Counted from the stretch's first letter, positions 8,750 to 55,025 are shown. The stretch is 64,000 bases of DNA from Macrostomum lignano (GCA_002269645.1 NIVC01000096.1:310001-374000); one strand, 5' to 3'. The notes: generated by a model not told the origin, from the letters alone. A program made the numbers and translations.

Positions 8750-9262
8750 CAGCCTCCCAAAATGTCAGTTGCTGAGCCAGCCTCCCAGATCCTCAGTTGC
8801 ATGGGCCGGCCTCCCAGATCTTCAGTTGCATGGGCCGGCCTCCCAGATCCTCAGTTTCTGGGCCGGCCTCCCAGATCCTCAGTTGCTGGGCCAGCCTCCC
8901 AGATCCTCAGTTGCTGGGCCAGCCTCCCAGATCCTCAGTTGCTGGGCCAGCCTCCCAGATCCTCAGTTGCTGGGCCAGCCTCCCAGATCCTCAGTTGCTG
9001 GGCCAGCCTCCCAGATCCTCAGTTGCTGGGCCAGCCTCCCAGATCCTCAGTTGCTGGGCCAGCCTCCCAGAGTGTCAGTTGCTGGGCCAGCCTCCCAGAT
9101 CCTCAGTTGCTGGGCCAGCCTCCCAGATCCTCAGTTGCTGAGCCACCACTCTCCCAGATCCTCAGTTGCTAGGCCAGCCTCCCAAATCCTCAGTTGCTGG
9201 GCCAGCCTCCCAGATCCTCAGTTGCTGAGCCACCACTCTCTCAGATCCCCAGTTGCTGGGGC
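8750..9262 (+). repeat. 28-bp minisatellite family A (ggccagcctcccagatcctcagttgctg)
   Basis: Tandem array; the same unit occurs at 29.6 kb and 36.5 kb. Confidence 0.95.
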
Positions 9263-10095
9263 AGCCTCCCGGAGTCTAAAAATTTCTTGTCACAGTAGAT
9301 AAACAGCTGACATAAGAAGGAACCAACAACAGAGTCGTGTAGGGCCTTTGCTTTGACACGAACTCGCAGAATGAAAGAGACAGAACAAGAAACAAATCAA
9401 TTATCTACTCGTCGAAATTAACAAAATCAACACTGTTTGTTGTTTGTTTTAAATCTCGAAAAAGCTTCAAAGTTCGTGCTTGATATTTTAAAATATTCTA
9501 TCAATCAAGCAATTTCAAAAGCAGCCGAATCTTAACGCATGCTTGCTCCTCTCTGATTGCCAGATGGCTTTTATGGCAGTCGTCTGTTTATTTCATAGCG
9601 ATTCTATTCATACATATACAAACCAAATAGTTTTATAAATTTCCTGTCAAACCTCTTTAGGCAGTCCTGCATACTGGAAAGTGATTGCCTATAGGATATA
9701 TGCATATCCGCCATCAAATCTGGACGTGTCTCAAACCATGAGAATCAGAAACTCTGTTTAATTAATTTAATTGAACAGAGGACTAAACACTGTAAACCCT
9801 GTACGGGGCATAAGTGAGCGATTTTCGGAATTTAGACACTGACGGTCAGGGCTGTTTGCTCTGTAGGGTTCTGTGTGAAAATTTTATAGTTTAATTTGGA
9901 TCTCCATCTTCAGTATTTATTACTTTGTAGTTTAAAAAATCATCAGGATGACACTACCATAGTAAAATTGGATGTCTCAAGATGTAAAAATATGAAATTT
10001 CGAAACCTTAACAAGGATGTCACCTTAAAGACAGAAATATCAGTAAGAATACGAGTGTACGAGTACATTTGAGTCAGCTTTGACGCCATAGGGTC

Positions 10096-11340
10096 AAGAA
10101 TAAATGCGAGGATGTCAGAATGAATGCGAGGATGTCAGAATAAATGCGAGGATGTCAGAATAAATGCGAGGATGTCAGAATAAATGCGAGGATGTCAGAA
10201 TAAATGCGAGGATGTCAGAATGAATGCGAGGATGTCAGAATGAATGCGAGGATGTCAGAATGAATGCGAGGAAGTCAGAATAAATGCGAGGATGTCAGAA
10301 TGAATGCGAGGATGTCAGAATGAATGCGAGAATGTCAGAATGAATGCGAGGATGTCAGAATGAATGCGAGGATGTCAGAATAAATGCGAGGATGTCAGAA
10401 TGAATGCGAGGATGTCAGAATGAATACGAGGATGTCAGAACGAATTTGAGGATGTCAGAACGAATTTGAGGATGTCAGAACGAATTTGAGGATGTCAGAA
10501 CGAATTTGAGGATGTCAGAACGAATTTGAGGATGTCAGAACGAATTTGAGGATGTCAGAACGAATTTGAGGATGTCAGAACGAATTTGAGGATGTCAGAA
10601 CGAATTTGAGGATGTCAGAACGAATTTGAGGATGTCAGAACGAATTTGAGGATGTAGGAACGAATTTGAGGATGGCAGAACGAATTTGAGGATGTCAGAA
10701 CAAATTTGAGAATGGCAGAACGAATTTGAGGATGGCAGAACAAATTTGAGGATTGCAGAACGAATTTGAGGATGTAGGAACGAATTTGAGGATTGCAGAA
10801 CGAATTTGAGGATGTAGGAACAAATTTGGGGATGGCTGAACGAATTTGAGGATGGCAGAACGAATTTGAGGATGGCAGAACGAATTTGAGGATGTAGGAA
10901 CAAATTTGAGGATTGCAGAACGAATTTGAGGATGTAGGAACGAATTTGAGGATTGCAGAACGAATTTGAGGATGTCAGAACGAATTTGAGGATGTCAGAA
11001 CGAATTTGAGGATGTCAGAACGAATTTGAGGATGTCAGAACGAATTTGAGGATTTCAGAACGAATTTGAGGATGTAGGAACAAATTTGGGGATGTCAGAA
11101 CGAATTTGAGGATGTCAGAACGAATTTGAGGATGTAGGAACGAATTTGAGGATGGCAGAACGAATTTGAGGATGGCAGAACGAATTTGAGGATGGCAGAA
11201 CGAATTTGAGGATGGCAGAACGAATTTGAGGATGGCAGAACGAATTTGAGGATGGCAGAACGAATTTGAGGATGGCAGAACGAATTTGAGGATGTAGGAA
11301 CAAATTTGAGGATGGCAGAACGAATTTGAGGATGGCAGAG
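10096..11340 (+). repeat. 20-bp minisatellite (gaatgaatgcgaggatgtca changing to gaacgaatttgaggatgtca)
   Basis: About 62 units; the variant switches near 10440. Confidence 0.95.
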
Positions 11341-17870: not shown

Positions 17871-18395
17871 TAAGACAAATATGAAACTACAATAAATAGT
17901 TAAGCCTAAATATGTTTAAGTTAATAACTTATGCTCATAAATTAGCTGTTTAGGTTAATTAAGTTCGTGAGAAATTAAGCTTTATATAGTATATTTCTCT
18001 GTAACCTCTGCTGCGATGGGTCTCGGGCCATTTTAACACTTCTTATCTCACAGTGGGTTGGAAGCTCAGCCCTCAACTGCAAGTAAGTACCTCATTAAAT
18101 TGTGCATTTGGATTTAATTGTACCACTTATTAACTCACCGTGCAATGCTGCTGCATGGGCCCACCTCAGAGGGATGCCCCCGCAGCTTGGCCACTTTATA
18201 GCCAGTCTTTATCTTATCTAATCAGCAAGCGTAATTATTGTCACGCTGGGCGAACCCATTACCTGTAAATAGCTGCTTTTTGTTACTTAGACCTTGATAG
18301 TCTCAGGTCTATGGGCGACGTTCAAAGTATAGAGCAACTTCCCAATGCCCCCATGACCCCTCGTTTTGATTGAGAAGGACAGCTGACCCCTCTGC

Positions 18396-19418
18396 GTGCT
18401 TATGTCAGACCTGATGAGTGCTTATGTCAGACCTGATGTGTGCTTATGTCAGACTTAATGCGTGCTTATGTCAGACATGATGTGTGCTTATGTCAGACTT
18501 AATGCGTGCTTATGTCAGACCTGATGTGTGCTTATGTCAGACCTGCGTGCTTATGTCAGACCTGATGCGTGCTTATGTCAGACCTGATGCGTGCTTATGT
18601 CAGATCTAATGCGTGCTTATGTCAGACCTGATGCCTGCTTATGTCAGACCTGATGTGTGCTTATGTCAGACCTGATGCGTGCTTATGTCAGACATGATGT
18701 GTGCTTATGTCAGACTTAATGCCTGCTTATGTCAGACCTGATGTGTGCTTATGTCAGACCTGATGTGTGCTTATGTCAGATCTAATGCGTGCTTATGTCA
18801 GACCTGATGCCTGCTTATGTCAGACCTAATGCGTGCTTATGTCAGACATGATGTGTGCTTATGTCAGACTTAATGCGTGCTTATGTCAGACCTGATGTGT
18901 GCTTATGTCAGACCTGCGTGCTTATGTCAGACCTGATGCGTGCTTATGTCAGACCTGATGCGTGCTTATGTCAGATCTAATGCGTGCTTATGTCAGACCT
19001 GATGCCTGCTTATGTCAGACCTAATGCGTGCTTATGTCAGACATGATGTGTGCTTATGTCAGACTTAATGCCTGCTTATGTCAGACCTGATGTGTGCTTA
19101 TGTCAGACCTGCGTGCTTATGTCAGACCTGATGCGTGCTTATGTCAGACCTAATGTGTGCTTATGTCAGACCTGATGTGTGCTTATGTCAGACATGATGT
19201 GTGCTTATGTCAGACTTAATGCGTGCTTATGTCAGACCTGATGTGTGCTTATGTCAGACCTGCGTGCTTATGTCAGACCTGATGCGTGCTTATGTCAGAC
19301 CTGATGCGTGCTTATGTCAGACCTGATGCGTGCTTATGTCAGACCTAATGTGTGCTTATGTCAGACCTAATGTGTGCTTATGTCAGACCTGATGTGTGCT
19401 TATGTCAGACCTGATGCG
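18396..19418 (+). repeat. 22-bp minisatellite gtgcttatgtcagacctgatgc
   Basis: Tandem array in Dbx intron 2. Confidence 0.95.
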
Positions 19419-24084: not shown

Positions 24085-24575
24085 GGTAGCGCCAAAAATG
24101 GCTTTGGAGTGGCGCCAAAGATGGCTTCGGAGCGGCGCCAAAACAAAGAGACAATGGCATCACAAAAAGAGTCAGTGACGCTAAAACATAGAGTCAGTGG
24201 TGCCAAAACAAAGAGTCAGTAGCATCAAAACAAAGAATCAGTAGCGTCAAAACAAAGAGTCAGTGGCGTCACAACAAAGAGTCAGTAGCGTCAAAACAAA
24301 GAGTCAGTAGCATCAAAACAAAGAGTCAGTAGTGCCAAAACAAATATTCAGTGGCGCCAAAACAAAGAGTCAGTAGCATCAAAACAAAGAATCAGTAGCG
24401 TCAAAACAAAGAGTCAGTGGCGTCACAACAAAGAGTCAGTAGCGTCAAAACAAAGAGTCAGTAGCATCAAAACAAAGAGTCAGTAGTGCCAAAACAAATA
24501 TTCAGTGGCGCCAAAACAGAGTCAATGGTGCCACAACAAAGAGTCAGCATAGTGTCAAAACAGAGTCAGTTGCGC
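24085..24575 (+). repeat. 22-bp minisatellite gagtcagtagcgtcaaaacaaa
   Basis: Includes an ~154-bp (7-unit) higher-order duplication. Confidence 0.9.
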
Positions 24576-28980: not shown

Positions 28981-29581
28981 GCATCCATTAAAAAGACAGA
29001 TAAATAGAGACACAGAGACAGACATTAACAAGATAGATAAACAAATGCAAGAAACAGACGGTTGGACAAACGCAACAGGTAATAACTGCGCGCATGTTTC
29101 ACTGTGAGCACACTGACTCACCTGACAATTACATCTTTAATGCTGCTACACAGTCCTGAAGCGACAGTCGTTTAACAAACACTCCACCCTACCCTACAAT
29201 AAGCTACAGAACAGTGCAAAACAGAAAGCCTATCAGCTGTCAATCAAGTGCTCGGGATTGAACTCTCGCTTTTTCTCACCGCGATGAGCCAGCATTTAAT
29301 TAGAATTTTTACTCCAGCCCGCCAACATCGCTAAGCATGCGATGCGCATTTACCATTTTTATAGTAGAGACACGTACAATTAAATAAGAGTGGCGTCAGC
29401 AGGAAAGCAATCGAGCTGAAGCAGCTGAAAGATAGCAGCGACTCAGCGCAAAACTGCAGTGGTTTGCCTGTGCTAAAGCACTACAACTTGATGCTCAATT
29501 CTAATGAACGCAGTGCTAATACTGAAAAGAATCACTACTGCCTTTGGCGAGACAAAAGCGGGAATCTAGAGGAGGCCGAGG

Positions 29582-30345
29582 CCCAGCAATTAAGGATCTG
29601 GGAGGCTGGCACAGAAACTGAGGATCTGGGAGGCTGGCACAGAAACTGAGGATCTGGGAGGCTGGCCCAGAAACTGAGGATCTGGGAGGCTGGCACAGAA
29701 ACTGAGGATCTGGGAGGCTGGCCCAGCAACTGAGGATCTGGGAGGCTGGCCCAGAAACTGAGGATCTGGGAGGCTGGCCCAGCAACTGGGGATCTGGGAG
29801 GCTGGCACAGAAACTAAGGATCTGGGAGGCTGGCTCATCAACTGAGGATCTGGGAGGCTGGCACAGCAACTAAGGATCTGGGAGGCTGGCTCATCAACTG
29901 AGGATCTGGGAGGCTGGCACAGCAACTGAGGATCTGGAAGGCTGGCACAGCAACTGAGGATCTCGAGGCTGGCCCAGAAACTGAGGATCTGGGAGGCTGG
30001 CACAGCAACTGAGGATCTGGGAGGCTGGCCCAGCAACTGAGGATCTGGGAGGCTGGCTCAGCAACTGAGGATCTCGAGGCTGGCCCAGAAACTGAGGATC
30101 TGGGAGGCTGGCTCATTAACTGAGGATCTGGGAGGCTGGCTCATCAACTGAGGATCTGGGAGGCCGACCCAGCAACTGAGGATCTGGGAGGCTGGCCCAG
30201 AAACTGAGGATCTGGGAGGCTGGACCAGCAACAGAGGATCTGGGAGGCTGGCCCAGCAACTGAGGATCTGGGAGGCTGGCCCAGCAACTGAGGATCTGGG
30301 AGGCTGGCTCAGCAACTGAGGATGTGGGAGGCTGGCCCAGCAACT
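29582..30345 (-). repeat. 28-bp minisatellite family A (reverse orientation)
   Basis: gaggatctgggaggctggcccagcaact units. Confidence 0.95.
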
Positions 30346-31149
30346 GTATTTCTGTGCGTATGGCTAGAGATAACCTAGAGAATAAATTTATCAATGGATA
30401 TGGACGAGTAGCTACTCGATATTCTGTACTCATAGTAGGCACAATCGAGCAGTGCGATAATATTATTATAAAAAGAAAGTAACAAATGAAAACATAGAAA
30501 TGCTGTTTACTGTAACAAACACAAATGAACTCTTTGAATAGACAACAATGCCTTTGATTTTGTTAATTTCAGCGGCACGAATTCAAATATTTTATTTAGT
30601 CTCATACCGATTGCATGTTGATAAATAGACAATGGCTGCATCAATATATTGTAGCAAGAATTTGAAATGTTTAATTGTGTTCAAACACTTCAAAATGTGT
30701 ATTAAAATGAATTTAGGGTTGTTTATTAAATGAAAAACTGAGTCAGTGAGTCTTGATAAACTTTCTCAACATCCATAGCTGAAATCAGTATTGGTGAAAA
30801 GAAATTATTTAAAAAACATAACATACTACTTTTGAACTTGAGTAGTAAATAGATTAACAATAGGTAAATGTAGATTACCGGTTAAATATCAGAAACTCTT
30901 TGTCTTTAGATTAAATGCTGTTGCAATGCTTTTAATATTTTTTTCAATTGACAAAGACAATTTACTTAACAGCAGAGTGAAAACAGCTTGAGGGCACAAT
31001 GCGAATTTCCAGGGTGGCGTATATAAATGAGAACTGAGTAGTTACTGTCAAACCAAAAAATCTGATAAAAAGCTATATTAATAAGGCTAAGGAGGGAACA
31101 ACAGAGAAAGTGCAATTCAAAGTTTCCACTTTCGATTTGGGAGAGAGGG

Positions 31150-35989: not shown

Positions 35990-36630
35990 TGGGTCTGGGA
36001 GGGCGGTGGCTGAGCCTGGGGTCTGGGAGGGCGGTGGCTGAGCCTGGGGTCTGGGAGGGCGTGGCTGAGCCTGGGGTCTGGGAGGGCGTGGCTGAGCCTG
36101 GGGTCTGGGAGGGCGGTGGCTGAGTCCGGGGTCTGGGAGGGCGTGGCTGAGCCTGGGGTCTGGGAGGGCGGTGGCTGAGCTTGGGGTCTGGGAGGGCGGT
36201 GGCTGAGCCTGGGGTCTGGGAGGGCGGTGGATGAGCTTGGGGTCTGGGAGGGCGGTGGCTGAGCCTGGGGTCTGGGAGGGCGGTGGCTGAGCCTTGGGTC
36301 TGGGAGGGCGGTGGCTGAGCCTTGGGTCTGGGAGGGCGGTGGCTGAGCCTGGGGTCTGGGAGAGCGGTGGCTGAGCCTGGGGTCTGGGAGGGCGGTGGCT
36401 GAGCCTGGGGTCTGGGAGGGCGGTGGCTGAGTCTGGGAGGGTGGCCCAGCAACTGAGGATCTGGGAGGCTGGCCCAGCAACTGAGGATCTGGGAGGCTGG
36501 CCCAGCAACTGAGGATCTGGGAGGCTGGCCCAGCAACTGAGGATCTGGGAGGCTGGCCCAGCAACTGAGGATCTGGGAGGCTGGCCCAGCAACTGAGGAT
36601 CTGGGAGGCTGGCCCAGCAATCGAGGATCT
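35990..36630 (-). repeat. Compound 28-bp array: variant ggcggtggctgagcctggggtctgggag (35990-36437) joined to family A (36438-36630)
   Basis: Tandem arrays in NADK2 intron 3. Confidence 0.92.
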
Positions 36631-36653
36631 GATGCGAGACTCCGCAGGCTCAC

Positions 36654-37539: not shown

Positions 37540-38225
37540 TCAGATCCCTAAACTCTGAATCCCTAACTTTAAATGCATAAACTCCAAATCCCCAAACTCC
37601 AAGTCTCTAAACTCCAAGTCTCTAAACTCCAAATCCCCAAACTCCAAGTCTCTAAACTCCAAGTCTCTAAACTCCAAGTCTCTAAACTCCAAATCCCCAA
37701 ACTCCAAGTCTCTAAACTCCAAATCTCTAAACTCCAAATCCCCAGACTCTAAATCCCCAAACTCTAAATCCCCAAACTCCAAGTCTCTAAACTCTAAATC
37801 CCCAAACTCCAAATCTCTAAACTCCAAATCCCCAAACTCCAAGTCTCTAAACTCCAAGTCTCTAAACTCCAAGTCTCTAAACTCCAAATCCCCAAACTCC
37901 AAGTCTCTAAACTCTAAATCCCCAAACTCCAAGTCTCTAAACTCCAAACTCCAAGTCTCTAAACTCCAAATCCCAAAACTCTAAATATCTAAACTCCAAA
38001 TCTCTAAACTCCAAATCCCCAAACTCCAAGTCTCTAAACTCCTAATCCCCAAACTCCAAGTCTCTAAACTCCAAATCCCAAAACTCCAAATCCCTAAACT
38101 CCAAGTCTCTAAACTCCAAATCTCAAAACTCCAAATCCCCAAACTCCAAGTCTCTAAACTCTAAATCCCTAAACTCCAAATCCCCAAACTCCAAATCTTT
38201 AAACTCCAAATCTCTAAACTCCACA
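37540..38225 (+). repeat. 15-bp minisatellite aaactccaagtctct
   Basis: NADK2 intron 1. Confidence 0.93.
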
Positions 38226-38433
38226 TTCTCAAACGACTAATCTTAATACTTCCACTTGAAAGTCCATAAAATCCAAATCCCGAAACAACAAATCCAAGAC
38301 CATAAATCCCTATAATCTAATTAATTCCATAAAATTGAAATCCAAAAAGTAAAATTTGTTAAACACTAAATTCATAAACTACAAATCCATAGGTGTCAAT
38401 GCAGATATAATAGAGCAGGAACAAATCACTCAC

Positions 38434-38706
38434 ATGATCCTTCAGCTTCTCCTCAGACAGATGCGGATTAAGCGATCTCTCATACTCCAAGCGAGTAATT
38501 TTAGTTAGCAGCAGAAGTCGTCTGGGCTCAAAACCAGGCAGCTGCTGGGAGAAGCGCATGGCTGGTTGGCACCAACCGCCCGTGGCAGCAGAGGAGAGCA
38601 ATTTAGCCAACTGTTTGGTACCAGTGCAGCATCGGTTGCACTGGCTGACAGTCGCAATGGCCAACTGACATCCATGCACTGTGCGAAGTATAACTGAACC
38701 AAGCAT
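38434..38706 (-). CDS. NADK2: NADK2 exon 1 with probable mitochondrial transit peptide
   Basis: ATG at 38706; ...FEPRRLLLLTKITRLEYERS...LSEEKLKDH|gtgagt. The joined CDS is 1374 nt (457 aa). The start could instead be the ATG at 38559. Confidence 0.85.
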
Positions 38707-40699
38707 TGCACTTATTAATATTCTGTTTTTTTAAATATTTGTAGACTGATAGATAGCAGGAAAATTTTGATTTAACATTGCACAATCGATTGAGCAGTTC
38801 TTAGGTTTGATGACTGGCATTAAAAATGTAAAATTTTTGGATAAAGACCTAATTGCATAAATGCTAGTTCGTCAAGCAATCTCAATTGTATTAGAGACAA
38901 AGCAAAGTAGAGACTTTGGTAAGGATATTTCTTGTTTTTGTTAATAGGATAGGCCACAATAAAGTGTTGATTAATTATAGTTAGCATGTGGTAAATCAGG
39001 TGGCAAATATGGATAGCAAATCAAAAATAAAAATATTCTGCATAATTAAAATTTTCTATCTGGTCATTCTAAATTATCTACTTGCTGGTTGGAATTCTTA
39101 TCAGTGGCTATTACTTGTCTAACTATAACTTTTTACTCTTTTTGTAGTGTGTTATAAAAGAATTCTACTTAAATTTATTGTAGTAAACTAACATATGCAT
39201 ATTCATATTATGGCTATGACATTTTACCAAAGTAATGTTTTTACAAATCATAGAAATCACATTTTAGCAAAGAGTTATATTATATAAAATATAGAATTAT
39301 AATGCAATTTTACAAATCTGATAAATATAAGTAACAAATAAAGAATAAGCTTTTACTTTACAAATTAAAAAAGAAAAATTCTAAGTAATAAAGAAGTAAA
39401 AGAAACAAATCTATTTATGCCTTGTTAGGTCTAATGCTAGGCCTAACCTTATTGTTTTTGAGTTTTGTAACAAAGAAGATAGAATAGAGTTTGGTAGGAT
39501 GCTTTGCAATTGCAACATAGTAAGTATGACAAAGGTAGCCTATGGCTATGTTTTGCTTGCATTACAGTAATATAATTTCAAAAACTTCAATTGCCATTCT
39601 TGTCAACTAAAATGATACAAATCTTGATGAACTTTAGGATACAATTTTTAGGATATAGGATGCAAACATTGCAATGCAAAATATGTTTTATAAAGGATAA
39701 ATATATTATAAAGCTTATTTTTAATAATTAGTTTGCAGGTCATTTTAATATTTATAATCAGATGTAATTTTTTTGAATTGAGCTACAAGTTTTCTTTAAC
39801 AAAATAACACATGCATTCTTATTGTCACTATACACTTTTACCACTTTCTGCTTTTGTGCATTTAGCTACAAATATTCTTGGTCATGGTCAGCTTTTTACC
39901 ATTTTTCTTTAAATAAAATAACATTAATTTTTTGGCATTGTCCAATAAAAAGTAAGCAAATTCTGATTAGTAAAATAATCATACATTTGCAACATTACTG
40001 ACTTACACTGGCTGTGTAACTTACTTTTCAACCAAAAATGTAAATTTCCTTTGAAAGAAAGCTAAGCAAAATAAACATAATTTTGATTAAACAACAAGAG
40101 TAACTATAATAATATTATTTAGACTAAATGCTGCACTATCTAATTAGTACTATATGAACATTACTGGTGCTTTTTTAATAGCCACCTAATTGTAGCCTAT
40201 GAAGTAATTTGCAAATTGTCTTAATACAATGTAGTGAGCTTACTATATAAGTCATGATTCATGAAAGTCTAGAATGCTTATGCCTAGAAGAAAAGTGAAA
40301 TAAATGCAGTGTGATACAATTCGCAATGTATTCTGGGTTTTTTGGCCATATAGGGTTTTTTGGCCCCTTGAAAATCTCATTTGCAACTGGATTTTTGGCA
40401 TCAAAGGCCAATCTGGCAACTTCATTTTCCTTGTACCAGTTGCCAATTAAAAAAATAATATAAGTGTAATATTGTAAGTGTAATAAAAGACTACACGAAA
40501 GTGTAATAAAACTATATAAATCAATGTGATGGAATTATTAGTTTGTTATTATTTGCTAAATTCTAAGTTTATGAAACTAAGAGTATTTTTGCATAGATTC
40601 TTAAATTTGAAGTCAGGCTCTAACAAAAAATTGTTAACAGTTAGGAAAAAGTCAAATAAAAATGGGAGTAAATGCATGTTAAATTACAATTTGAGGCTT

Positions 40700-41270
40700 T
40701 TGAAACTTCTCTTGTCTCTACAATCTCGTCCTCCATTTCCTCTTTTTATTTTTTCTTATTACTTATCCCTCTTCTCTCTTTTCCTTTCTTCTCTTTTCTC
40801 CCCTTTCTTCTCTAAACTCTCATCTCTCCACTCTACTTTCTTATCTCTTCTCACTAATCTCTAATCCCTCCTGTCTTTTCTACTCTCTAATCTCTCCTTA
40901 TATCCTCTTTATCTTCTCTACTCCCATTTACTCTCTCCTTTCATCTCTCTCCTCACTTAGCTTTTCTCTCCTCTTCTATCTTTTCTCTCATTGCATCTCT
41001 TGCCTCTCCTTTGTTTGCTAATCTCTAATCTTCTATTCCCTCTCCTTTGAAGCAAGAAAATCTGCCAACATTTTTGCTAAAGATAAGAGGAGAGAAAAGG
41101 GAAAAGAAAAAATGGGAGAGAGAAGAGGGGAGAAGAGAGAAGGGATCAAAGCAGCAGAGAAGGAAAAGAAGAAGGAAGGAGAGGAGAGAAAAAAGGGAAA
41201 TAGGAGGGAGAGAGAGAAGAGAGGAGAGAAGGTAAAAAAGAAAGGAGAGAAAAGAAATTTTGAGAATGGG
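40700..41270. repeat. CT-rich tract followed by GA-rich tract
   Basis: Pyrimidine tract ~40700-41045, purine tract ~41080-41270. Confidence 0.8.
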
Positions 41271-41289
41271 CTTGAAATTTGAGAACAGT

Positions 41290-41783
41290 TGAGCGAGATT
41301 GAATTCAGTATAGAAAAAATAAATATTTTATTGTGATAGATACAAAAAATATTGTGAAGATGCAATACCAAATTGACAATATCCTCAGCCTAATCAACTG
41401 ACAGTCAACAAGCCAGTGTACACAAACCCTAGCACAGCCTGTAAGCTTTTAGTAATGATACCTTTAAGTTCCAGGCAAGAGGCTTTAGCTTTGTAAATGC
41501 CTGAACTAAATGCAGCCCTGAAATAGTTGTTGCTAGCTACTAGCACATTTTTATGCATAGAAACTAGACCCTGCTAGCACTGAGAGTCAGGGCATAATAG
41601 TCTGAGCATAGCCTGAGCAGGTTGAGCTAGGACAGCAGCTTGGCTAGATAGCCAGTAGCCAACACTATGCAACTCTTTTGGCCAGCTTTGAAGCACTTTT
41701 CTGATGCTGTGGCTGTGGATATGGTTGACAATGTTGAAACTTTACAAATGTTTAGCATCCTGCTAATCTTAGGGAGAAGCCAT
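41290..41783 (-). pseudogene. Hypermutated BTB/POZ (Kelch-like) pseudogene fragment
   Basis: Minus frame from ATG 41783: MASP*D*QDAKHL*...C*QGLVSMHKNVLVASNNYFRAAFSSGIYKAKASCLELKGIITKSLQAVLGFVYTGLLTVS*, then a frameshift to AEDIVNLVLHLH. BTB motifs HKxVL, YFRA.F and F.YTG are present, with multiple in-frame stops. Confidence 0.8.
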
Positions 41784-42001
41784 CTTAGGACAAGACTTCC
41801 TATGGGACCTAAAGGCTACTACTGTTAGAGCAACAGAGATTGTTGTTGTTAATGTGTTAATAAGGTAATGTTAATGAATAATATAATATAATATAATATA
41901 ATAAACCAAAAATTAAAAAAAAGAAACAAAGAGAATTTGATTTATTTGCCTTTAAAAAGATGGATTAGTGATCAAATCTAACTAGACCATTAGCTAGGCC
42001 T

Positions 42002-42646
42002 GGGTACCAGTCGTTTCGGTGACAGACATTTTGGTGACAAATAGTCGTTTTGGTGACAAGTTGCAATTGTGATAGACACACTTCATTTTCAATGAAAAAT
42101 CAAAGATTTCATAAGTACTGTTGTTTTAGTGATAAGAGGCATTTCATAATATTCGGTTGTAGTTATTTTGTTAAGATTTATGTTTCATAATATATTTAAA
42201 AATTTTCATCAAAAGAATATATTTAAAAAAAGAAAGCAAACTAATTATATTGTTTTCTTCCTGTGCAGATCATTTTGAATTGTCCCAGAGTGTTCAGACA
42301 CAAACCATAAACCTATAGAGAATCCTCATGAAATGCAGACCACGAGAAAGGCGGAGATATTCACTCGTTGACGCTTTTGCATGTTTAAATTGGAAAACAT
42401 AATTCAAAAGACCGCAACTCTATAATTGTAAATAAACAAAATTAAATACAGAAATACTTAACTGTTTAAAAAAATATAAAATTTTAGGCTCGATATCCCT
42501 TAAGATTTTCTAAGTAATTTTCTGTTTAAAAACAGAATGGCTATAACTAAAATTGTATTTTTTTGTCACCGAAATGACTTCTGCTTGTCACCAAAATTCA
42601 AAAAGACTGTCACTGAAACATATTGTCACCAAAACGACTGTAATCC
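42002..42646. mobile_element. MITE with GG termini, subterminal repeats and 8-bp TSD (Merlin- or hAT-like)
   Basis: TSD ctaggcct at 41994-42001 and 42647-42654. Inverted ends gggtaccagtcgtttcggtgaca versus tgtcaccaaaacgactgtaatcc, with repeated ttttggtgacaa motifs at both ends. No ORF. Confidence 0.8.
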
Positions 42647-44019
42647 CTAGGCCTATACATAATACATAGTATATAAAAGTATAAAACTGGTATTTATTTT
42701 AGCTATTGTATGCCCTATTCACTATTGTATAAAAAACAATAGTACTATTTATAAGGTCAATGAAAAGGAAAATATATATTAACTTCAATCTTCATATAGG
42801 AGCCTAGACAAATCATTTATTTTCAGTAAGGCCTACTCCTGAATATTTACAGTATGATAATACCAAATAAATCCACTATAAATAAGCTATTGATCTTTAG
42901 TTTAGACCCTATGCTAGAGCTTTAAGTTTAAGTTAAGTTTAAGCTTTAAAACTGCATTTACAAATGTGCCAACCAATAAAACATCTGTCTTAATAAAGAT
43001 CACACCTAAGGCCTAATAATAATAGGCCTAGCTAATACTAGTAATAGCTAATAGGTCTAGGAATGCATCAAATAGCCTAAATAGGCCTACAATTTCAAAA
43101 TAGTACTTGTTATGTTAAAATTAATATTAATAATACTTTTTTAAAATAAATAGGGGCCTTATGCTATCAAATTAAATTTTCAACAAAGCCAAGCCCCACC
43201 TATAAACTAGACATGTGCTGTCTGTCTCATCTCATGTCTGTAGACAAGACATGGTGTTGTGACATGTGCAATTGCAAATATAGCACCTTATCATCCTTAT
43301 GAATATGACTGACATGTGTCAAATAAACCCTAGGCCTTGGACTCTTGAGTCAGAAAATTTTCATGGTAGGCCTAAGCTCTGCTTAAGCTAATCAAATTCA
43401 GCTCCAACAAAGCAGTGGTACCTCATCTCATCATCAGCATAGGCATAGAGGATCTCTTCGAGTTCGACTTCGATCGAGTTCAGACTGGTAAGCAAAAAAT
43501 TTAAAACTCCCGCGCTCAGGGTACGAATTTCCTAGAAAGCATCTTTCGCTAATTCCGAAATATTATCTGTCTATCCCCACTATTTTTAAATTCACAAAAT
43601 AAGTTAAGTTCAAGTAAACGGATTTAATTACAACGCACACTTATTGCGCTAGCTAACTATCAGCAAATCAATTCCTTTTTGTCGAATTCTGGAAAGTTTT
43701 TCTTTCGGTTTAATTAGGTATGGAAGTTTTTCATAGTTGGTGCATTGTATATAAATTGATACTTACTGACCAACTATTAGAATCGCGGTTTGCTACCTTA
43801 TATTAGTATAACATGTCAGCTAGCGCTTATGTGCTTGCATGGTGTACGTACATGTACATGTACATATACATGTATGTACATGTTGAGTCGATCGAGTCGA
43901 GCTTCTTTCGAAATCGATATTTCCTAAAAAGTGAGCCTCCACATCCCGTGCGCAATTTCAGAGCTAAGTATAAGGGTCCGGGCCCAAAAATAAAGTGCCC
44001 TCTGTCTGATGTTCATGAC

Positions 44020-44208
44020 CAGCTGGGAGCTGGTACGGATCCAGAAAATTTTGAACGGGGGGCGCAGATTACTAAGGTACATGTATGTATATCATGTACA
44101 TTGTATATGCACACGATAATGTGTATTTTCCATATAAAAAATATAAAAAATTCTAACTCGACGGTTGGGGGCGCGTGCTCTGTACGCCTGCCCCTAAATA
44201 CGCCACTG
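44020..44208. mobile_element. Small hAT-like MITE
   Basis: CAG...CTG termini; right end cccctaaatacgccactg; 8-bp TSD ttcatgac / ctcatgac with one mismatch. Confidence 0.6.
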
Positions 44209-45665
44209 CTCATGACATTCTAAATGTCAAATTTCATTCATGTTCATGTAATGCATGTAAGTGATCGATTAAGTGCTTGACGCAATCACACAGTGCAGTG
44301 CTATCAGTGATACATGTTTTTCATGTGTGCACTAGTTTTAGGCAAAGTTAACTATGATCTTCGCAGGTTTTCATGCTGGCCAATTTTCTACGAAAATATA
44401 TACATACGCGCATACATGTTATATTATGTATATGTATCATACTTATACACGCTATTATAGCTAACAACTTATGCATGTTTTTTATTCAGTAGTACGAGAC
44501 CGAGTAGTATTGCAATTATAATCTTCAAAAGGATTTGACACTAGAGTCTCTAAAACTCAGAGATAATGCAGGAGGCAGGGAACAGTGGGGCAACTGACCC
44601 CAGACATTGATGATTAATATCATCTTCAAGTTCAATGTAATGGGAGATCGAGGACATAAGTACATGATGTATTAGATTCATTTATTAGATAATTTTTTAG
44701 CGTATTTTCCTTATACTCCTACTGCATGGCAGTAGAGTTATAAAATAAAAGTTTAGTATAATTTAGGCTGGGTATTTTTTGTACGTTTCGTACTTAAACA
44801 ATTATCGATATACCAGTTTTTATGTTTATATATGGTACAAGTATTTCGTGGGGGTCTAGCCATATAAATATAAATATACTGGAGCGGTCTATATAGCTCA
44901 CTACTTCTCTGCTGCAACTGCAAGTACAACTGTACGTAATAACCAACAGCATCCAGTCGAGGTCAACTGCCCCCCTGTTAAAAAAGGGCTTCGAAAAAAT
45001 TTTCTTTGAAAAACTATACAGACGTCCGGTGGTTTCTGCTCGCTCTACTTTTTTGATTCCACGAAACTCTTCCGTTAAAATTATCTTAAGCTTTTATCAA
45101 TGATTTCAACTCCCCAAAACTCAAACTTCCCCTCGGCATTAAAAAGTTTCATCAAATTAACAAATTTTCGTTAAAGCATCTCGCAGCAATCGTTCTCAAC
45201 CTCAGGAGAACTAAACCCTTCAGGATTTCAAGTCCGCCCCAGCTCTTGGTACACTTTAATCCGAGTTAAGTCCAGCCCCATTAACCTTATCGATTCTAGC
45301 GAATGCAACGGTTCAGAATGCAATTTAAAAGGATTTTCTTGGCAAGATTTGATCATGATTTTTGCCAGTTCAACTTCTACAGCGACTGAGCTTCTCAGTT
45401 CTAAAAATGTAGATTTTAATTTGATTCAGGACATACCTAATCCTCGATTGATGCCATGCTTTAACAAACTTGAGCGAGCTGTCCCGAACTTAATTTGTAT
45501 TTTTCTGCTTTCATCGGATCGGCACTTAAATTATGAGTTGTATTGTATTTCTAGTTTCCTAAAAGGATGCGAAGCTGTTTTCTGTGTTTTGTTGATGTTG
45601 ATGTTCATGAGCATGTGAAAGATGCTGTCCTGTCCCGTGCTGTGCTGTTTTGTGCTGTACCAATG

Positions 45666-54279: not shown

Positions 54280-55025
54280 TTATTCTGACCTATTCTGACC
54301 TATTCCGACCTATTCCGACCTATTCCGACCTATTCCGACCTATTCCGACTTATCCTGACCTATCCTGCCCTATCCTGACTCATTCTGATCAATCCTGCCT
54401 CATCCTGACCTATCCTGACCTATTCCGACCTATCCTGACCTATTCCGACCTATCCTGACCAATTCCGACCTATCCTGACCTATTCCGACCTATCCTGACC
54501 TATCCTGACCTACTCCGACCTATCCTGACCTATTCCGACCTATCCTGACCTATTCCGACCTATCCTGACCTATTCCGACCTATCCTGACCTATTCCGACC
54601 TATCCTGACCTATTCCGACCTATCCTGACCTATTCCGACCTATCCTGACCTATTCCGACCTATCATGACCTATCCTGCCCTATCCTGACTCATTCTGATC
54701 AATCCTGACCTATTCCGACCTATCCTGACCTATTCCGACCTATCCTGACCTATTCCGACCTATCCTGACCTATTCCGACCTATCCTGACCTATCTTGACC
54801 TACTCCGACCTATCCTGACTCATTCCGACCTATCCTGACCTATTCCGACCTATCCTGACCTATCCTGATCTATCCTGACCTATCCTGACTCATTCCGATC
54901 TATCCTGACCTATTCCGACCTATCCTGACCTATCCTGACCTATTCCGACCTATCCTGACCTATCCTGATCTATCCTGACCTATCCTGACCTATCCTGACC
55001 TATCCTGACCTATCCTAACCTATCC
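54280..55025 (+). repeat. 10-bp repeat cctatcctga / cctattccga
   Basis: ZC4H2 intron 3. Confidence 0.94.

What the first reader, a model, noticed from the sequence alone, without database searches (positions are those of the whole stretch)
38871..43458. Sharply bounded CpG desert with TpA excess: RIP-like or methylation-driven hypermutation domain in an animal genome
Seen: outside the internal MITE there are only 4 CpG in ~3.9 kb, while flanking DNA is CpG-rich (five CpG in 43459-43477, right at the border). This is not just AT richness. In 41401-41820 (GC ~44%) I count 0 CpG against ~20 expected, and TpA/ApT is about 35/22 (~1.6). CTAG and TAGGCCTA words abound, as expected from CCGG or CGGGCCCG with CG>TA change. 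CpA+TpG is not depleted, so classical Neurospora CpA-RIP does not fit. The pattern is complete CpG loss plus further C>T in CpA. Known: 5mC deamination erodes CpG gradually, and fungal RIP produces dense, locally bounded transitions. Inference: a locus-targeted process saturated this region with transitions.
Basis: partly seen in the sequence, partly recalled or inferred. Interest (0 to 1): 0.85.

Follow-up and report, generated by a model that had tools for sequence, protein, structure and literature searches.

The report
CpG-erased, C-to-T hypermutated flatworm DNA domain
A 4.6-kb stretch of a Macrostomum flatworm genome has lost almost every CpG, and a dead gene fragment inside it differs from its intact copy almost only by C-to-T changes, which points to targeted, probably methylation-driven, mutational erosion in an animal whose methylation pattern is unmapped.

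Summary
The CpG desert is real. Window 38871-43458 holds 4 CpG outside a younger hAT-like MITE, against about 80 expected from the window's other unique DNA (o/e 0.04 vs 0.81, P~1e-29). The edges fall at the stated coordinates.

The window is Macrostomum lignano or a very close relative. Inside the desert, 41355-41848 (minus strand) is a dead copy of exon 1 (BTB domain) of a KLHL9/13/26-like gene.

I aligned the relic to the intact M. lignano gene. The 361-nt core shows 55 G:C>A:T transitions, 2 A:T>G:C transitions and 5 transversions. All 31 paralog CpGs are lost, 12 of them to TpA. Non-CpG hits concentrate at CAG and CCA, and both strands are hit equally.

Two baselines are ordinary: minisatellites in the window, and homeolog comparisons at the intact locus (ts:tv 1-2, CpG sites about 3x). 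So the process is targeted to this compartment, not genome-wide.

The domain is not unique. The intact gene's locus carries two more unique CpG-free, TAG-enriched stretches, conserved in three homeologous contigs.

Best explanation: dense germline cytosine methylation of a silent domain, followed by deamination (CG >> CAG is a DNMT3-type signature; the species keeps DNMT1 and DNMT3). A RIP-like, duplication-triggered burst is not excluded.

The parts
38871..43458 (.). CpG-erased AT-rich domain: 4 CpG in about 3.95 kb outside the MITE, CpG o/e 0.04, GpC o/e 1.56, TAG/CTA o/e about 1.3-1.4, CTAG o/e 1.74
41355..41848 (-). Dead copy of exon 1 (BTB/POZ domain) of a KLHL9/13/26-like gene, with 7 in-frame stops. 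The core 41355-41715 is 82-83% identical to M. lignano exon 1, and 98% identical if G:C>A:T transitions are ignored. No other exon of the gene is present in the window.
   Evidence: Pfam BTB E=1e-6; phmmer best hit P0015; tblastn and blastn against L001; alignment and spectrum
42002..42646 (.). hAT-like non-autonomous element (MITE) inserted into the desert. It has imperfect terminal inverted repeats, subterminal repeats GTCGTTTYGGTGACA, 12 CpG (o/e 0.85) and background-like TAG/CAG. It is therefore younger than the CpG erasure, or exempt from it.
41994..42001 (.). Left 8-bp target-site duplication CTAGGCCT of the MITE
   Evidence: read from the sequence
42647..42654 (.). Right 8-bp target-site duplication CTAGGCCT of the MITE
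   Evidence: read from the sequence
40720..41260 (.). Low-complexity block inside the desert: a polypyrimidine (CT-rich) half followed by a polypurine (AG-rich) half. It inflates the AG/CT statistics if not removed.
43459..45665 (.). Right flank: unique AT-rich DNA with normal CpG (o/e about 0.8-1.0). The step from 0 CpG in 824 nt to 4 CpG in 17 nt marks the border. No Pfam domain and no repeat copy in the window.
38224..38870 (.). Left flank: unique DNA with CpG o/e 0.53, lying between a 15-nt minisatellite and the desert

Best explanation
The segment is a silent, non-coding compartment of a Macrostomum genome. In the germ line its cytosines were densely methylated, at CpG and to a lesser degree at neighbouring CAG, as DNMT3-type enzymes do. 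Those cytosines were then converted to thymine by deamination on both strands.

The process removed essentially every CpG (CG>TG/CA, often on to TA), turned part of the CAG/CTG into TAG/CTA, lowered GC, and destroyed a duplicated fragment of a KLHL gene that lay in the domain. GC-rich words with no susceptible cytosine, such as AGGCCT, survived and now stand out as TAGGCCTA.

The process is confined to this compartment. Exons, CpG-normal non-coding DNA and minisatellites of the same genome show only about 3-fold CpG mutability. It is probably self-limiting, because once the CpGs are gone an ordinary spectrum resumes.

Shown: the CpG erasure, its borders, the near-pure C>T spectrum and its contexts in the relic, the ordinary baselines, and the recurrence at a second locus.

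Inferred: that 5-methylcytosine is the mutated base, that DNMT3/DNMT1 wrote it, and what recruits them.
For: 1. CpG o/e is 0.04 against 0.81 in other unique DNA, with sharp borders.
2. Relic vs intact paralog, 361-nt core: 55 G:C>A:T transitions, 2 A:T>G:C transitions, 5 transversions. Per-site C>T is 0.71 at CpG and 0.13 at non-CpG, against 0.013 for A:T>G:C. Over the full 513-nt homology block all 31 CpGs are lost (12 to TA, 11 to TG, 4 to CA).
3. The non-CpG hot spot is CAG (8/26 vs 13/135, p=0.008) and CCA. Mammalian DNMT3B prefers CAG, and non-CpG methylation clusters around methylated CpG (PMC5595995).
4. The changes are strand-symmetric and interspersed: 28 C>T and 27 G>A, runs test not significant. 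This fits symmetric methylation.
5. Changes are polarised to the relic lineage.
6. The baselines differ. Window minisatellites: CpG transitions 0.098, non-CpG C>T 0.033, A:T>G:C 0.030, ts:tv 2.0; chi-square against the relic p=5e-12. Homeologs L001/L002: CpG-site transitions 2.7% vs 0.8% in CpG-normal non-coding DNA; ts:tv 58:44 in deserts.
7. Domain-wide, TAG/CTA o/e is 1.3-1.5 in the window desert and the L001 deserts vs 0.74-0.78 in background, and CAG/CTG is 1.0 vs 1.34-1.48. AGGCCT is preceded by T in deserts (10/13) but by C, G or A elsewhere.
8. AG/CT is enriched (1.18-1.32 vs 1.05). A 2026 preprint derives this as a second-order mark of methylated-CpG mutability (10.64898/2026.09.02.747768).
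9. M. lignano retains DNMT1 and DNMT3 and has low 5mC in adults (PMC11292947, PMC9246332, PMC10658182). Low overall 5mC is what one expects if the methylated compartment has few CpGs left.
Against: - No methylation data were available for this locus or species. The genomic pattern of 5mC in free-living flatworms is described as unknown (PMC9246332).
- The implied CpG rate is about 90x the A:T>G:C transition rate (wide interval, roughly 25-600x). That is higher than the roughly 15-20x known for fully methylated mammalian DNA (my own knowledge).
- The embedded MITE keeps its CpGs, so any methylation is not now eroding everything in the domain, or the MITE is very young.
- In the intact locus a CpG-rich exon abuts a CpG-free intron at the splice site. 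A purely regional methylation domain does not easily explain this.
- The usual invertebrate target of methylation is transcribed gene bodies, not silent intergenic DNA.
- The non-CpG excess rests on 21 events.
Confidence: 0.55

Rival explanations
1. A RIP-like genome defence: a duplication- or homology-triggered burst of enzymatic C>T mutation in the germ line hit a duplicated segment (here including the copied KLHL exon 1) within one or a few generations. After the burst the segment evolved normally.
For: - The spectrum is as pure as in fungal RIP: 55 of 62 differences, on both strands.
- The mutated object is a duplicate of a gene fragment.
- Non-C>T divergence is only 1.9% while every CpG is gone.
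- Since the homeolog split, the deserts of the intact locus have evolved with an ordinary spectrum (ts:tv 58:44). This suggests that erasure was an episode rather than a steady regime.
- The 4 residual CpGs match the roughly 6 expected to regenerate after a burst (my estimate).
- The MITE inserted later is untouched.
Against: - The functional paralogs (three copies) are not mutated. In RIP both copies are hit (PMC2621366).
- Homology with the gene is limited to about 0.5 kb of a 4.6-kb desert, and no second copy of the remainder was found in the window or in the three fetched loci, the only host sequence I could search.
- The deserts at the intact locus are an intron and an upstream region with no sign of being repeats.
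- C>T and G>A are interspersed rather than in strand-coordinated runs.
- The Neurospora substrate index is not met (1.40).
- RIP and its RID-type enzyme are regarded as fungus-specific (PMC2621366, PMC12543289).
- An equilibrium under continuous decay predicts about 2-3 residual CpGs, which is equally compatible with the 4 observed.
Confidence: 0.15
2. Ordinary neutral decay. The desert is simply the oldest unconstrained DNA, under a genome-wide AT-biased, CpG-hypermutable regime. CpG-normal DNA would then be either young (repeats) or selected (exons, promoters), and the borders would be junctions between old and young DNA.
For: - Deserts recur at the only other locus examined, in an intron and an upstream region. 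There they are the fastest-evolving parts (3.6-5.3% vs 1.5-1.8% between homeologs).
- At that locus a CpG-rich exon meets a CpG-free intron exactly at the splice site.
- 6 of 8 exon differences between homeologs are at CpG sites.
- About 40% of the window is tandem arrays that may be young.
Against: - CpG sites in CpG-normal non-coding DNA diverged only 2.7% between homeologs, and 4-fold CpG sites in exons 5.6%. At that rate the relic could not have lost 31 of 31 CpGs while accumulating 1.9% other changes.
- Minisatellite units that are 10-20% diverged still keep their CpGs, with only about 3x CpG mutability.
- Many synonymous CpGs persist in the functional exons over the same period in which the relic lost all of them.
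- The relic's ts:tv of 57:5 differs from both baselines (p about 1e-6).
Confidence: 0.12
3. Editing by an AID/APOBEC-like cytidine deaminase acting on single-stranded DNA or on a cDNA intermediate of the copied fragment.
For: - The C>T spectrum is nearly pure.
- There is a weak preference for a pyrimidine 5' of the mutated C: non-CpG YCH 14/67 vs RCH 7/95, p=0.017.
- Homology ends at the exon 1/intron boundary, which would fit an RNA-derived copy.
Against: - The dominant determinant is the 3' base (CpG >> CpA), not the 5' base.
- Both strands are hit equally and the hits are interspersed, with no strand-coordinated clusters.
- CpG erasure extends over 4.6 kb of non-genic DNA and occurs in an intron and an upstream region elsewhere.
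- Exon 2 does not follow the relic, which argues against a spliced cDNA.
Confidence: 0.05
4. Not host biology: foreign or contaminant DNA, a chimeric join, or systematic base-calling error at modified bases in the assembly.
For: - Composition differs sharply from the flanks.
- Hot spots at CpG and CCAG resemble motifs that confuse some long-read base callers (my own knowledge).
Against: - The relic is 98% identical to the host's own KLHL exon once C>T changes are ignored.
- GpC excess and other dinucleotide biases are host-like.
- A MITE with perfect 8-bp target-site duplications lies inside the desert.
- Equivalent deserts are present and nearly identical in three separate contigs of the public M. 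lignano assembly: L001 vs L003 shows 0 differences in 1341 nt of the intron desert.
- 12 of 31 CpGs became TA, which consensus errors would not produce.
Confidence: 0.03

Closest known systems
Mosaic germ-line CpG methylation with CpG depletion in invertebrate genomes, and CpG decay of methylated pseudogenes and transposons in vertebrates
   Same: CpG is lost to TpG/CpA in a bounded compartment next to CpG-normal DNA. AG/CT rises as a secondary mark (10.64898/2026.09.02.747768). The species has DNMT1 and DNMT3 (PMC11292947, PMC9246332). A non-functional gene copy decays faster than its parent.
   Different: - Depletion is nearly absolute (o/e 0.04). Methylated compartments elsewhere are roughly 0.2-0.5 (my own knowledge).
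- The compartment is silent non-coding DNA, an intron and an upstream region, not a whole transcribed gene body. The exons next to it keep synonymous CpGs.
- There is an added C>T component at CAG/CCA.
- The implied CpG rate relative to other substitutions is several-fold above the mammalian figure.
Fungal repeat-induced point mutation (RIP)
   Same: C:G>T:A transitions on both strands make up about 90% of the changes. They destroy a duplicated gene fragment, create stop codons, lower GC, raise TpA/ApT, and leave a sharply bounded AT-rich block (PMC2621366).
   Different: - The preferred context is CpG, then CAG, rather than CpA. The CpA+TpG substrate index is not depleted.
- The other copies of the gene are untouched.
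- Duplication of the whole domain is not shown.
- Animals have no RID-type enzyme on record. RIP is described as fungus-specific (PMC2621366, PMC12543289).
AID/APOBEC hypermutation of retroelements and viral DNA in animals
   Same: Dense C>T/G>A changes that inactivate a copied sequence.
   Different: Here specificity lies in the 3' neighbour, both strands are hit in an interspersed way, and the affected tract is a 4.6-kb genomic domain.

Membership tests
Fungal RIP | Mutations are almost exclusively C:G>T:A transitions | tested here: met
   55 of 62 differences in the 361-nt core; 80 of 121 over the full 513-nt block
Fungal RIP | Acts on duplicated DNA and mutates both copies | tested here: not met
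   The relic is a duplicate of KLHL exon 1, but the three functional copies L001-L003 keep their CpGs. No duplicate of the rest of the desert was found in the data held.
Fungal RIP | CpA-biased target, seen as TpA/ApT >0.89 and (CpA+TpG)/(ApC+GpT) <1.03 (thresholds from my own knowledge of the Neurospora indices) | tested here: not met
   The product index is met (1.05). The substrate index is 1.40. The context order is CpG 0.64-0.71 > CpA 0.19-0.23 > CpT, CpC.
Fungal RIP | Premeiotic process dependent on a RID/DIM-2 type methyltransferase | not testable with these tools
   Needs genetics.
Methylation-driven CpG decay (mosaic methylated compartment) | Strong CpG deficit relative to neighbouring DNA, with TpG/CpA as products | tested here: met
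   o/e 0.04 vs 0.81. Paralog CpGs became TG (11), CA (4), TA (12).
Methylation-driven CpG decay (mosaic methylated compartment) | CpG-site mutability far above other sites in the compartment but not outside it | tested here: met
   Relic 0.71 vs 0.013 per site. Outside the compartment about 3x.
Methylation-driven CpG decay (mosaic methylated compartment) | The organism has maintenance and de novo cytosine methyltransferases | not tested
   Taken from the literature only: DNMT1 and DNMT3 retained in M. lignano (PMC11292947, PMC9246332).
Methylation-driven CpG decay (mosaic methylated compartment) | 5mC present on the domain in germ cells | not testable with these tools
   No methylome data available. 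The 5mC pattern in free-living flatworms is said to be unknown (PMC9246332).
AID/APOBEC editing | Strand-coordinated clusters and specificity set by the 5' neighbour | tested here: not met
   34 runs vs 28.5 expected, with 28 C>T and 27 G>A interspersed. The 3' G dominates. Only a weak YC preference is seen (p=0.017).
BTB-Kelch (KLHL9/13/26-like) gene, as a pseudogene fragment | BTB/POZ domain similarity plus a disabled reading frame | tested here: met
   Pfam PF00651 at 29.4 bits (cut-off 20.5). 69% amino-acid identity to P0051 over 55 residues. 7 stops from CAG/CGG. No BACK or Kelch part in the window.
hAT-type MITE | Terminal inverted repeats, 8-bp target-site duplication, no coding capacity | tested here: met
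   TIR and subterminal repeats. TSD CTAGGCCT on both sides. No Pfam hit. Assignment to the hAT superfamily rests on TSD length only.

The most novel reading that the evidence does not exclude
Macrostomum has an animal counterpart of fungal RIP/MIP. In this reading, a germ-line genome-defence process, probably DNMT3-based, recognises silenced or duplicated DNA. In a short burst it converts essentially all CpG cytosines and part of the CAG cytosines to thymine, permanently disabling the sequence and leaving CpG-free, TAG-rich blocks scattered through the genome.
Probability: 0.15. Interest if true: 0.9.

Novelty: new variant of a known kind. Interest (0 to 1): 0.6.

Why it matters
Free-living flatworms such as M. 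lignano keep DNMT1 and DNMT3, but where they methylate is unknown (PMC9246332). These CpG-erased blocks are a sequence-only footprint of where cytosine modification has acted in the germ line.

The footprint is unusually strong: it is a mutagen that is confined to sharply bounded compartments and can destroy a gene copy while other substitutions reach only about 2%.

If the process is a burst triggered by duplication or silencing, it would be the first RIP-like defence outside fungi. If it is steady methylation decay, it shows a non-canonical (non-gene-body) target and an extreme mutational cost of 5mC in a transgenic, RNAi-tractable model animal.

Both readings are directly testable with methylomes, DNMT knock-down and duplicated transgenes.

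Tried and rejected
- Rfam scan of the window found nothing.
- Six-frame Pfam scans found only the BTB relic in the desert and nothing in the flanks.
- The word-indexed protein search with the stop-containing relic peptide found nothing. The exhaustive phmmer search was needed.
- Ten window ORFs looked up by exact sequence were not in the collection, so no other individual or assembly of this locus could be fetched.
- P0015 and P0052 have no contig on record.
- Transition-tolerant local alignment between the relic's upstream DNA and the intact gene's upstream desert gave a score no better than shuffles.
- The window holds no relic of the neighbouring syntaxin or SCAI genes, so this is not a collinear decayed homeologous locus.
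- Neither the desert nor the flanks have repeat copies within the window. The MITE family is absent from the three M. lignano loci.
- At 500-nt resolution the TAG/CAG ratio is too noisy to define the borders independently of CpG.
- The idea that CTAG abundance by itself proves CCGG>CTAG is rejected as stated, because CTAG matches the desert's own dinucleotide expectation. CCGG>CTAG events are nevertheless seen directly in the relic alignment.
- I considered and rejected a mitochondrial or viral insert and bisulfite-like read artefacts. Host-like dinucleotide biases, the host paralog and interspersed changes on both strands argue against them.
- Wasik et al. 2015, the primary source for M. lignano methylation, is not held in the library.

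Full report
**Observation**

The last CpG left of the domain is at 38870 and the first on the right is at 43459. Between them, CpG occurs only at 40322, 40496, 40727 and 41294, plus 12 sites at 42012-42635.

Those 12 sites all lie in a 645-bp non-autonomous element at 42002-42646. It has imperfect terminal inverted repeats, repeated subterminal GTCGTTTYGGTGACA motifs and a perfect 8-bp target-site duplication CTAGGCCT.

Without this element the domain is about 3.95 kb, GC 0.316, with CpG o/e 0.04, GpC 1.56, TpA 0.92 and CpA/TpG 1.01/1.11.

About 40% of the window is minisatellite arrays. With these masked, the other unique blocks have CpG o/e 0.43-1.05, pooled 0.81, and 0.82 in AT-rich tiles. 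Four or fewer CpG then has P about 1e-29. Other long CpG-free runs in the window are arrays whose unit has no CpG.

The border cluster has four CpG, not five. The TpA excess is strong only in that segment and modest domain-wide (TpA/ApT 1.05 vs 0.84). CTAG is about 3-fold enriched relative to the genome background (o/e 1.74 vs 0.59), though not relative to the desert's own dinucleotides.

**What lies inside, and the organism**

On the minus strand, 41355-41848 encodes a BTB/POZ domain interrupted by stop codons (Pfam PF00651, 29.4 bits). An exhaustive phmmer search with its 59-codon open stretch gave a Macrostomum lignano BTB-kelch protein as the most identical hit (63%).

The full-length gene (P0051) is a KLHL9/13/26-like orthologue that is about 50% identical to mollusc and annelid proteins. 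It lies on M. lignano contig NIVC01002116.1 (locus L001).

- Window 41355-41715 aligns to exon 1 of that gene at 82-83% nucleotide identity. A looser alignment extends to 41848.
- Homology stops at the exon 1 splice donor. No other exon, and no relic of the neighbouring syntaxin or SCAI genes, is present in the window.
- A 28-nt minisatellite family of the window is related to a 29-mer array in L001.
- Ignoring G:C>A:T transitions, the relic core differs from the M. lignano exon at 7 of 361 positions.

The window is therefore M. lignano or a very close relative.

**Substitution spectrum of the relic**

| Measure | Value |
|---|---|
| Core (361 nt): G:C>A:T transitions | 55 |
| Core: A:T>G:C transitions | 2 |
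| Core: transversions | 5 |
| Full 513-nt block (same three classes) | 80 / 9 / 32 |
| Fate of the 31 paralog CpGs | none survives: TA 12, TG 11, CA 4, other 4 |
| GC of paralog vs relic | 0.60 vs 0.42 |
| TpA/ApT of paralog vs relic segment 41401-41820 | 0.82 vs 1.59 |
| Per-cytosine C>T at CpG | 0.71 |
| Per-cytosine C>T at non-CpG | 0.13 |
| A:T>G:C transitions per A/T site | 0.013 |

The extra transversions in the full block lie in the poorly conserved, Q-rich N-terminal part.

Among non-CpG sites, CAG is hit in 8 of 26 cases against 13 of 135 for the rest (p=0.008), and CCA in 7 of 14. C>T and G>A are equally frequent (28 and 27) and interspersed, with 34 runs against 28.5 expected.

The direction of change is secure. 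Where the intact protein agrees with 13 outgroup proteins, 15 of 19 relic-specific nucleotide changes are G:C>A:T transitions. Seven premature stops arise from CAG or CGG. 24 of 29 synonymous differences run in the same direction.

**Baselines from the same genome**

In 15 CpG-containing minisatellite arrays of the window, deviations from the unit consensus give the following:

- CpG transitions 0.098 per site
- non-CpG C>T 0.033 per site
- A:T>G:C transitions 0.030 per site
- transversions about 0.02 per site, so ts:tv is 2.0

The relic spectrum differs from this at p=5e-12.

I fetched two further copies of the syntaxin-KLHL-SCAI locus: L002, about 95% identical to L001, and L003, about 99% identical. 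Between L001 and L002:

- CpG-normal non-coding DNA differs by 1.5-1.8%, with CpG-site transitions 2.7% against 0.8% for other transitions.
- Exons differ by 0.42%, and 6 of the 8 differences are at CpG sites.
- 4-fold degenerate CpG sites differ by 5.6%.

Outside deserts, then, CpG is only mildly hypermutable, and synonymous CpGs persist in the functional exons. The relic lost all CpGs while gaining 1.9% other changes. Under the CpG-normal regime that loss would need far more time than its other changes allow.

This argues against a genome-wide or purely historical regime. It supports a compartment-specific process.

**The domain belongs to a class**

The intact locus contains two unique AT-rich CpG-free stretches:

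- a syntaxin intron, L001 6181-7520, with 1 CpG against 15.7 expected;
- the region upstream of the KLHL gene, L001 8674-10132, with 0 CpG against 35.9 expected.

Both are conserved as deserts in L002 and L003.

They share the window desert's signature. TAG/CTA o/e is 1.3-1.5 against 0.74-0.78 in background. CAG/CTG is 1.0 against 1.34-1.48. CTAG o/e is 3.0. GpC is high. AGGCCT words are preceded by T in deserts (TAGGCCT in 10 of 13) but by C, G or A elsewhere.

This is what C>T at CAG on both strands of CAGGCCTG would produce. AGGCCT itself contains no cytosine followed by a purine, so it would survive the process.

Between homeologs, these deserts evolve about 3 times faster than CpG-normal non-coding DNA (3.6-5.3%), but with an ordinary spectrum (ts:tv 58:44). 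Once CpG is gone, no C>T hypermutation is visible.

**Mechanism**

The specificity is CG far above CAG, on both strands, with an AG/CT rise. It is set by the base 3' of the cytosine. That is the behaviour of cytosine-5 methyltransferases, not of AID/APOBEC deaminases.

Mammalian DNMT3B prefers CAG, and non-CpG methylation clusters near methylated CpG (PMC5595995). AG/CT enrichment has been derived as a secondary effect of methylated-CpG mutability (10.64898/2026.09.02.747768). M. lignano retains DNMT1 and DNMT3 and has low adult 5mC (PMC11292947, PMC9246332, PMC10658182).

I therefore favour dense germ-line methylation of a silent compartment followed by deamination (confidence 0.55). The methylation itself is inferred, not shown.

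The points that sit badly with a simple steady regional model are these:

- The CpG rate is very high relative to other changes.
- The embedded MITE is untouched.
- A CpG-rich exon abuts a CpG-free intron at a splice site in the intact locus.
- The deserts have had an ordinary spectrum since the homeolog split.

These keep a burst-like, RIP-like process alive (0.15). The number of residual CpGs does not decide between them: 4 are observed, about 6 are expected to regenerate after a burst, and about 2-3 at a steady-state equilibrium.

Ordinary genome-wide decay (0.12), deaminase editing (0.05) and artefact or foreign DNA (0.03) are less likely, for the reasons given under the rival explanations.

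**Comparison with known systems, and novelty**

In spectrum and consequence the relic looks like a RIP product. It fails two defining features of RIP that I could test: both copies being mutated, and a depleted CpA substrate. The enzymology cannot be addressed here.

It fits the general kind [quoted passage not shown]. It differs in four ways: the near-absolute depletion, the non-genic target, the added CAG component, and the size of the rate ratio.

I found no description of such domains in Macrostomum in the searchable literature. [quoted passage not shown]

I rate it a new variant of a known kind, with interest 0.6.

**Limits**

- Only about 134 kb of Macrostomum sequence could be examined: the 64-kb window and three copies of a single other locus.
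- The direct spectrum rests on one relic of about 0.4-0.5 kb.
- Array variants are not independent events.
- The homeolog comparisons are unpolarised.
- No methylation, small-RNA or read-level data were available.

Noticed in passing
L001 6181-7520 and 8674-10132 vs L002 (M. lignano homeologs): Unique CpG-free stretches diverge 3.6-5.3% between homeologs. CpG-normal non-coding DNA of the same locus diverges 1.5-1.8% and exons 0.42%. Transitions and transversions are both raised in the deserts.
   Followed up: partly
L001/L002/L003 exon 1 (L001 10001-10585) and the other KLHL exons: All six exon-1 differences among the three functional copies, and 6 of 8 differences over all exons between L001 and L002, are CpG<>TpG/CpA changes. 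Non-CpG 4-fold sites differ at only 1 of 260. This may reflect synonymous constraint or gene conversion between homeologs.
   Followed up: partly
L001 8672-10000 vs L003: L001 and L003 are 99-100% identical elsewhere. In the upstream desert they differ at 24 sites (1.8%), mostly transversions. Possible causes are an alignment effect around indels or a conversion tract. Unexplained.
   Followed up: no
window 1-64000: About 40% of the window is minisatellite arrays with 10-60-nt units, about 38 distinct arrays in all. Several unrelated units share GGCGCC. A 28-nt family occurs in both orientations (8750-9270, 29580-30346, 35991-36631) and is related to a 29-mer array in M. lignano L001 5612-5940.
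   Followed up: partly
window 10108-11339, 54281-55013, 18393-19418, 1445-1915, 24134-24547: Some arrays show strong CpG-specific variation among units (19-30% of CpG positions changed by transition), while others show none. CpG mutability or array age seems heterogeneous among arrays.
   Followed up: no
window 39439, 41996, 42649, 43024, 43083, 43332, 43368; L001 8587, 8593, 8770: The palindrome-like word TAGGCCTA is confined to CpG-free domains. Outside them AGGCCT is preceded by C, G or A. The MITE inserted into one such word, which became its target-site duplication.
   Followed up: partly
window 42008-42058 and 42564-42640: The five subterminal repeat copies of the MITE differ from each other mostly at their two CpG positions (CG>TG or CG>CA). 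This hints at CpG decay in the element family or in place.
   Followed up: no
window 41355-41715 (relic core): A cytosine in CGA context was converted less often (3/10) than in CGC, CGG or CGT (31/38). This suggests a flanking-base effect at position +2.
   Followed up: no
window 40720-41260: A polypyrimidine block is followed by a polypurine block, forming an imperfect inverted arrangement just downstream of the relic. Similar AG-rich low-complexity arrays occupy intron 3 of the intact KLHL gene, and another lies at L001 1192-1388 within the neighbouring syntaxin gene's span.
   Followed up: no
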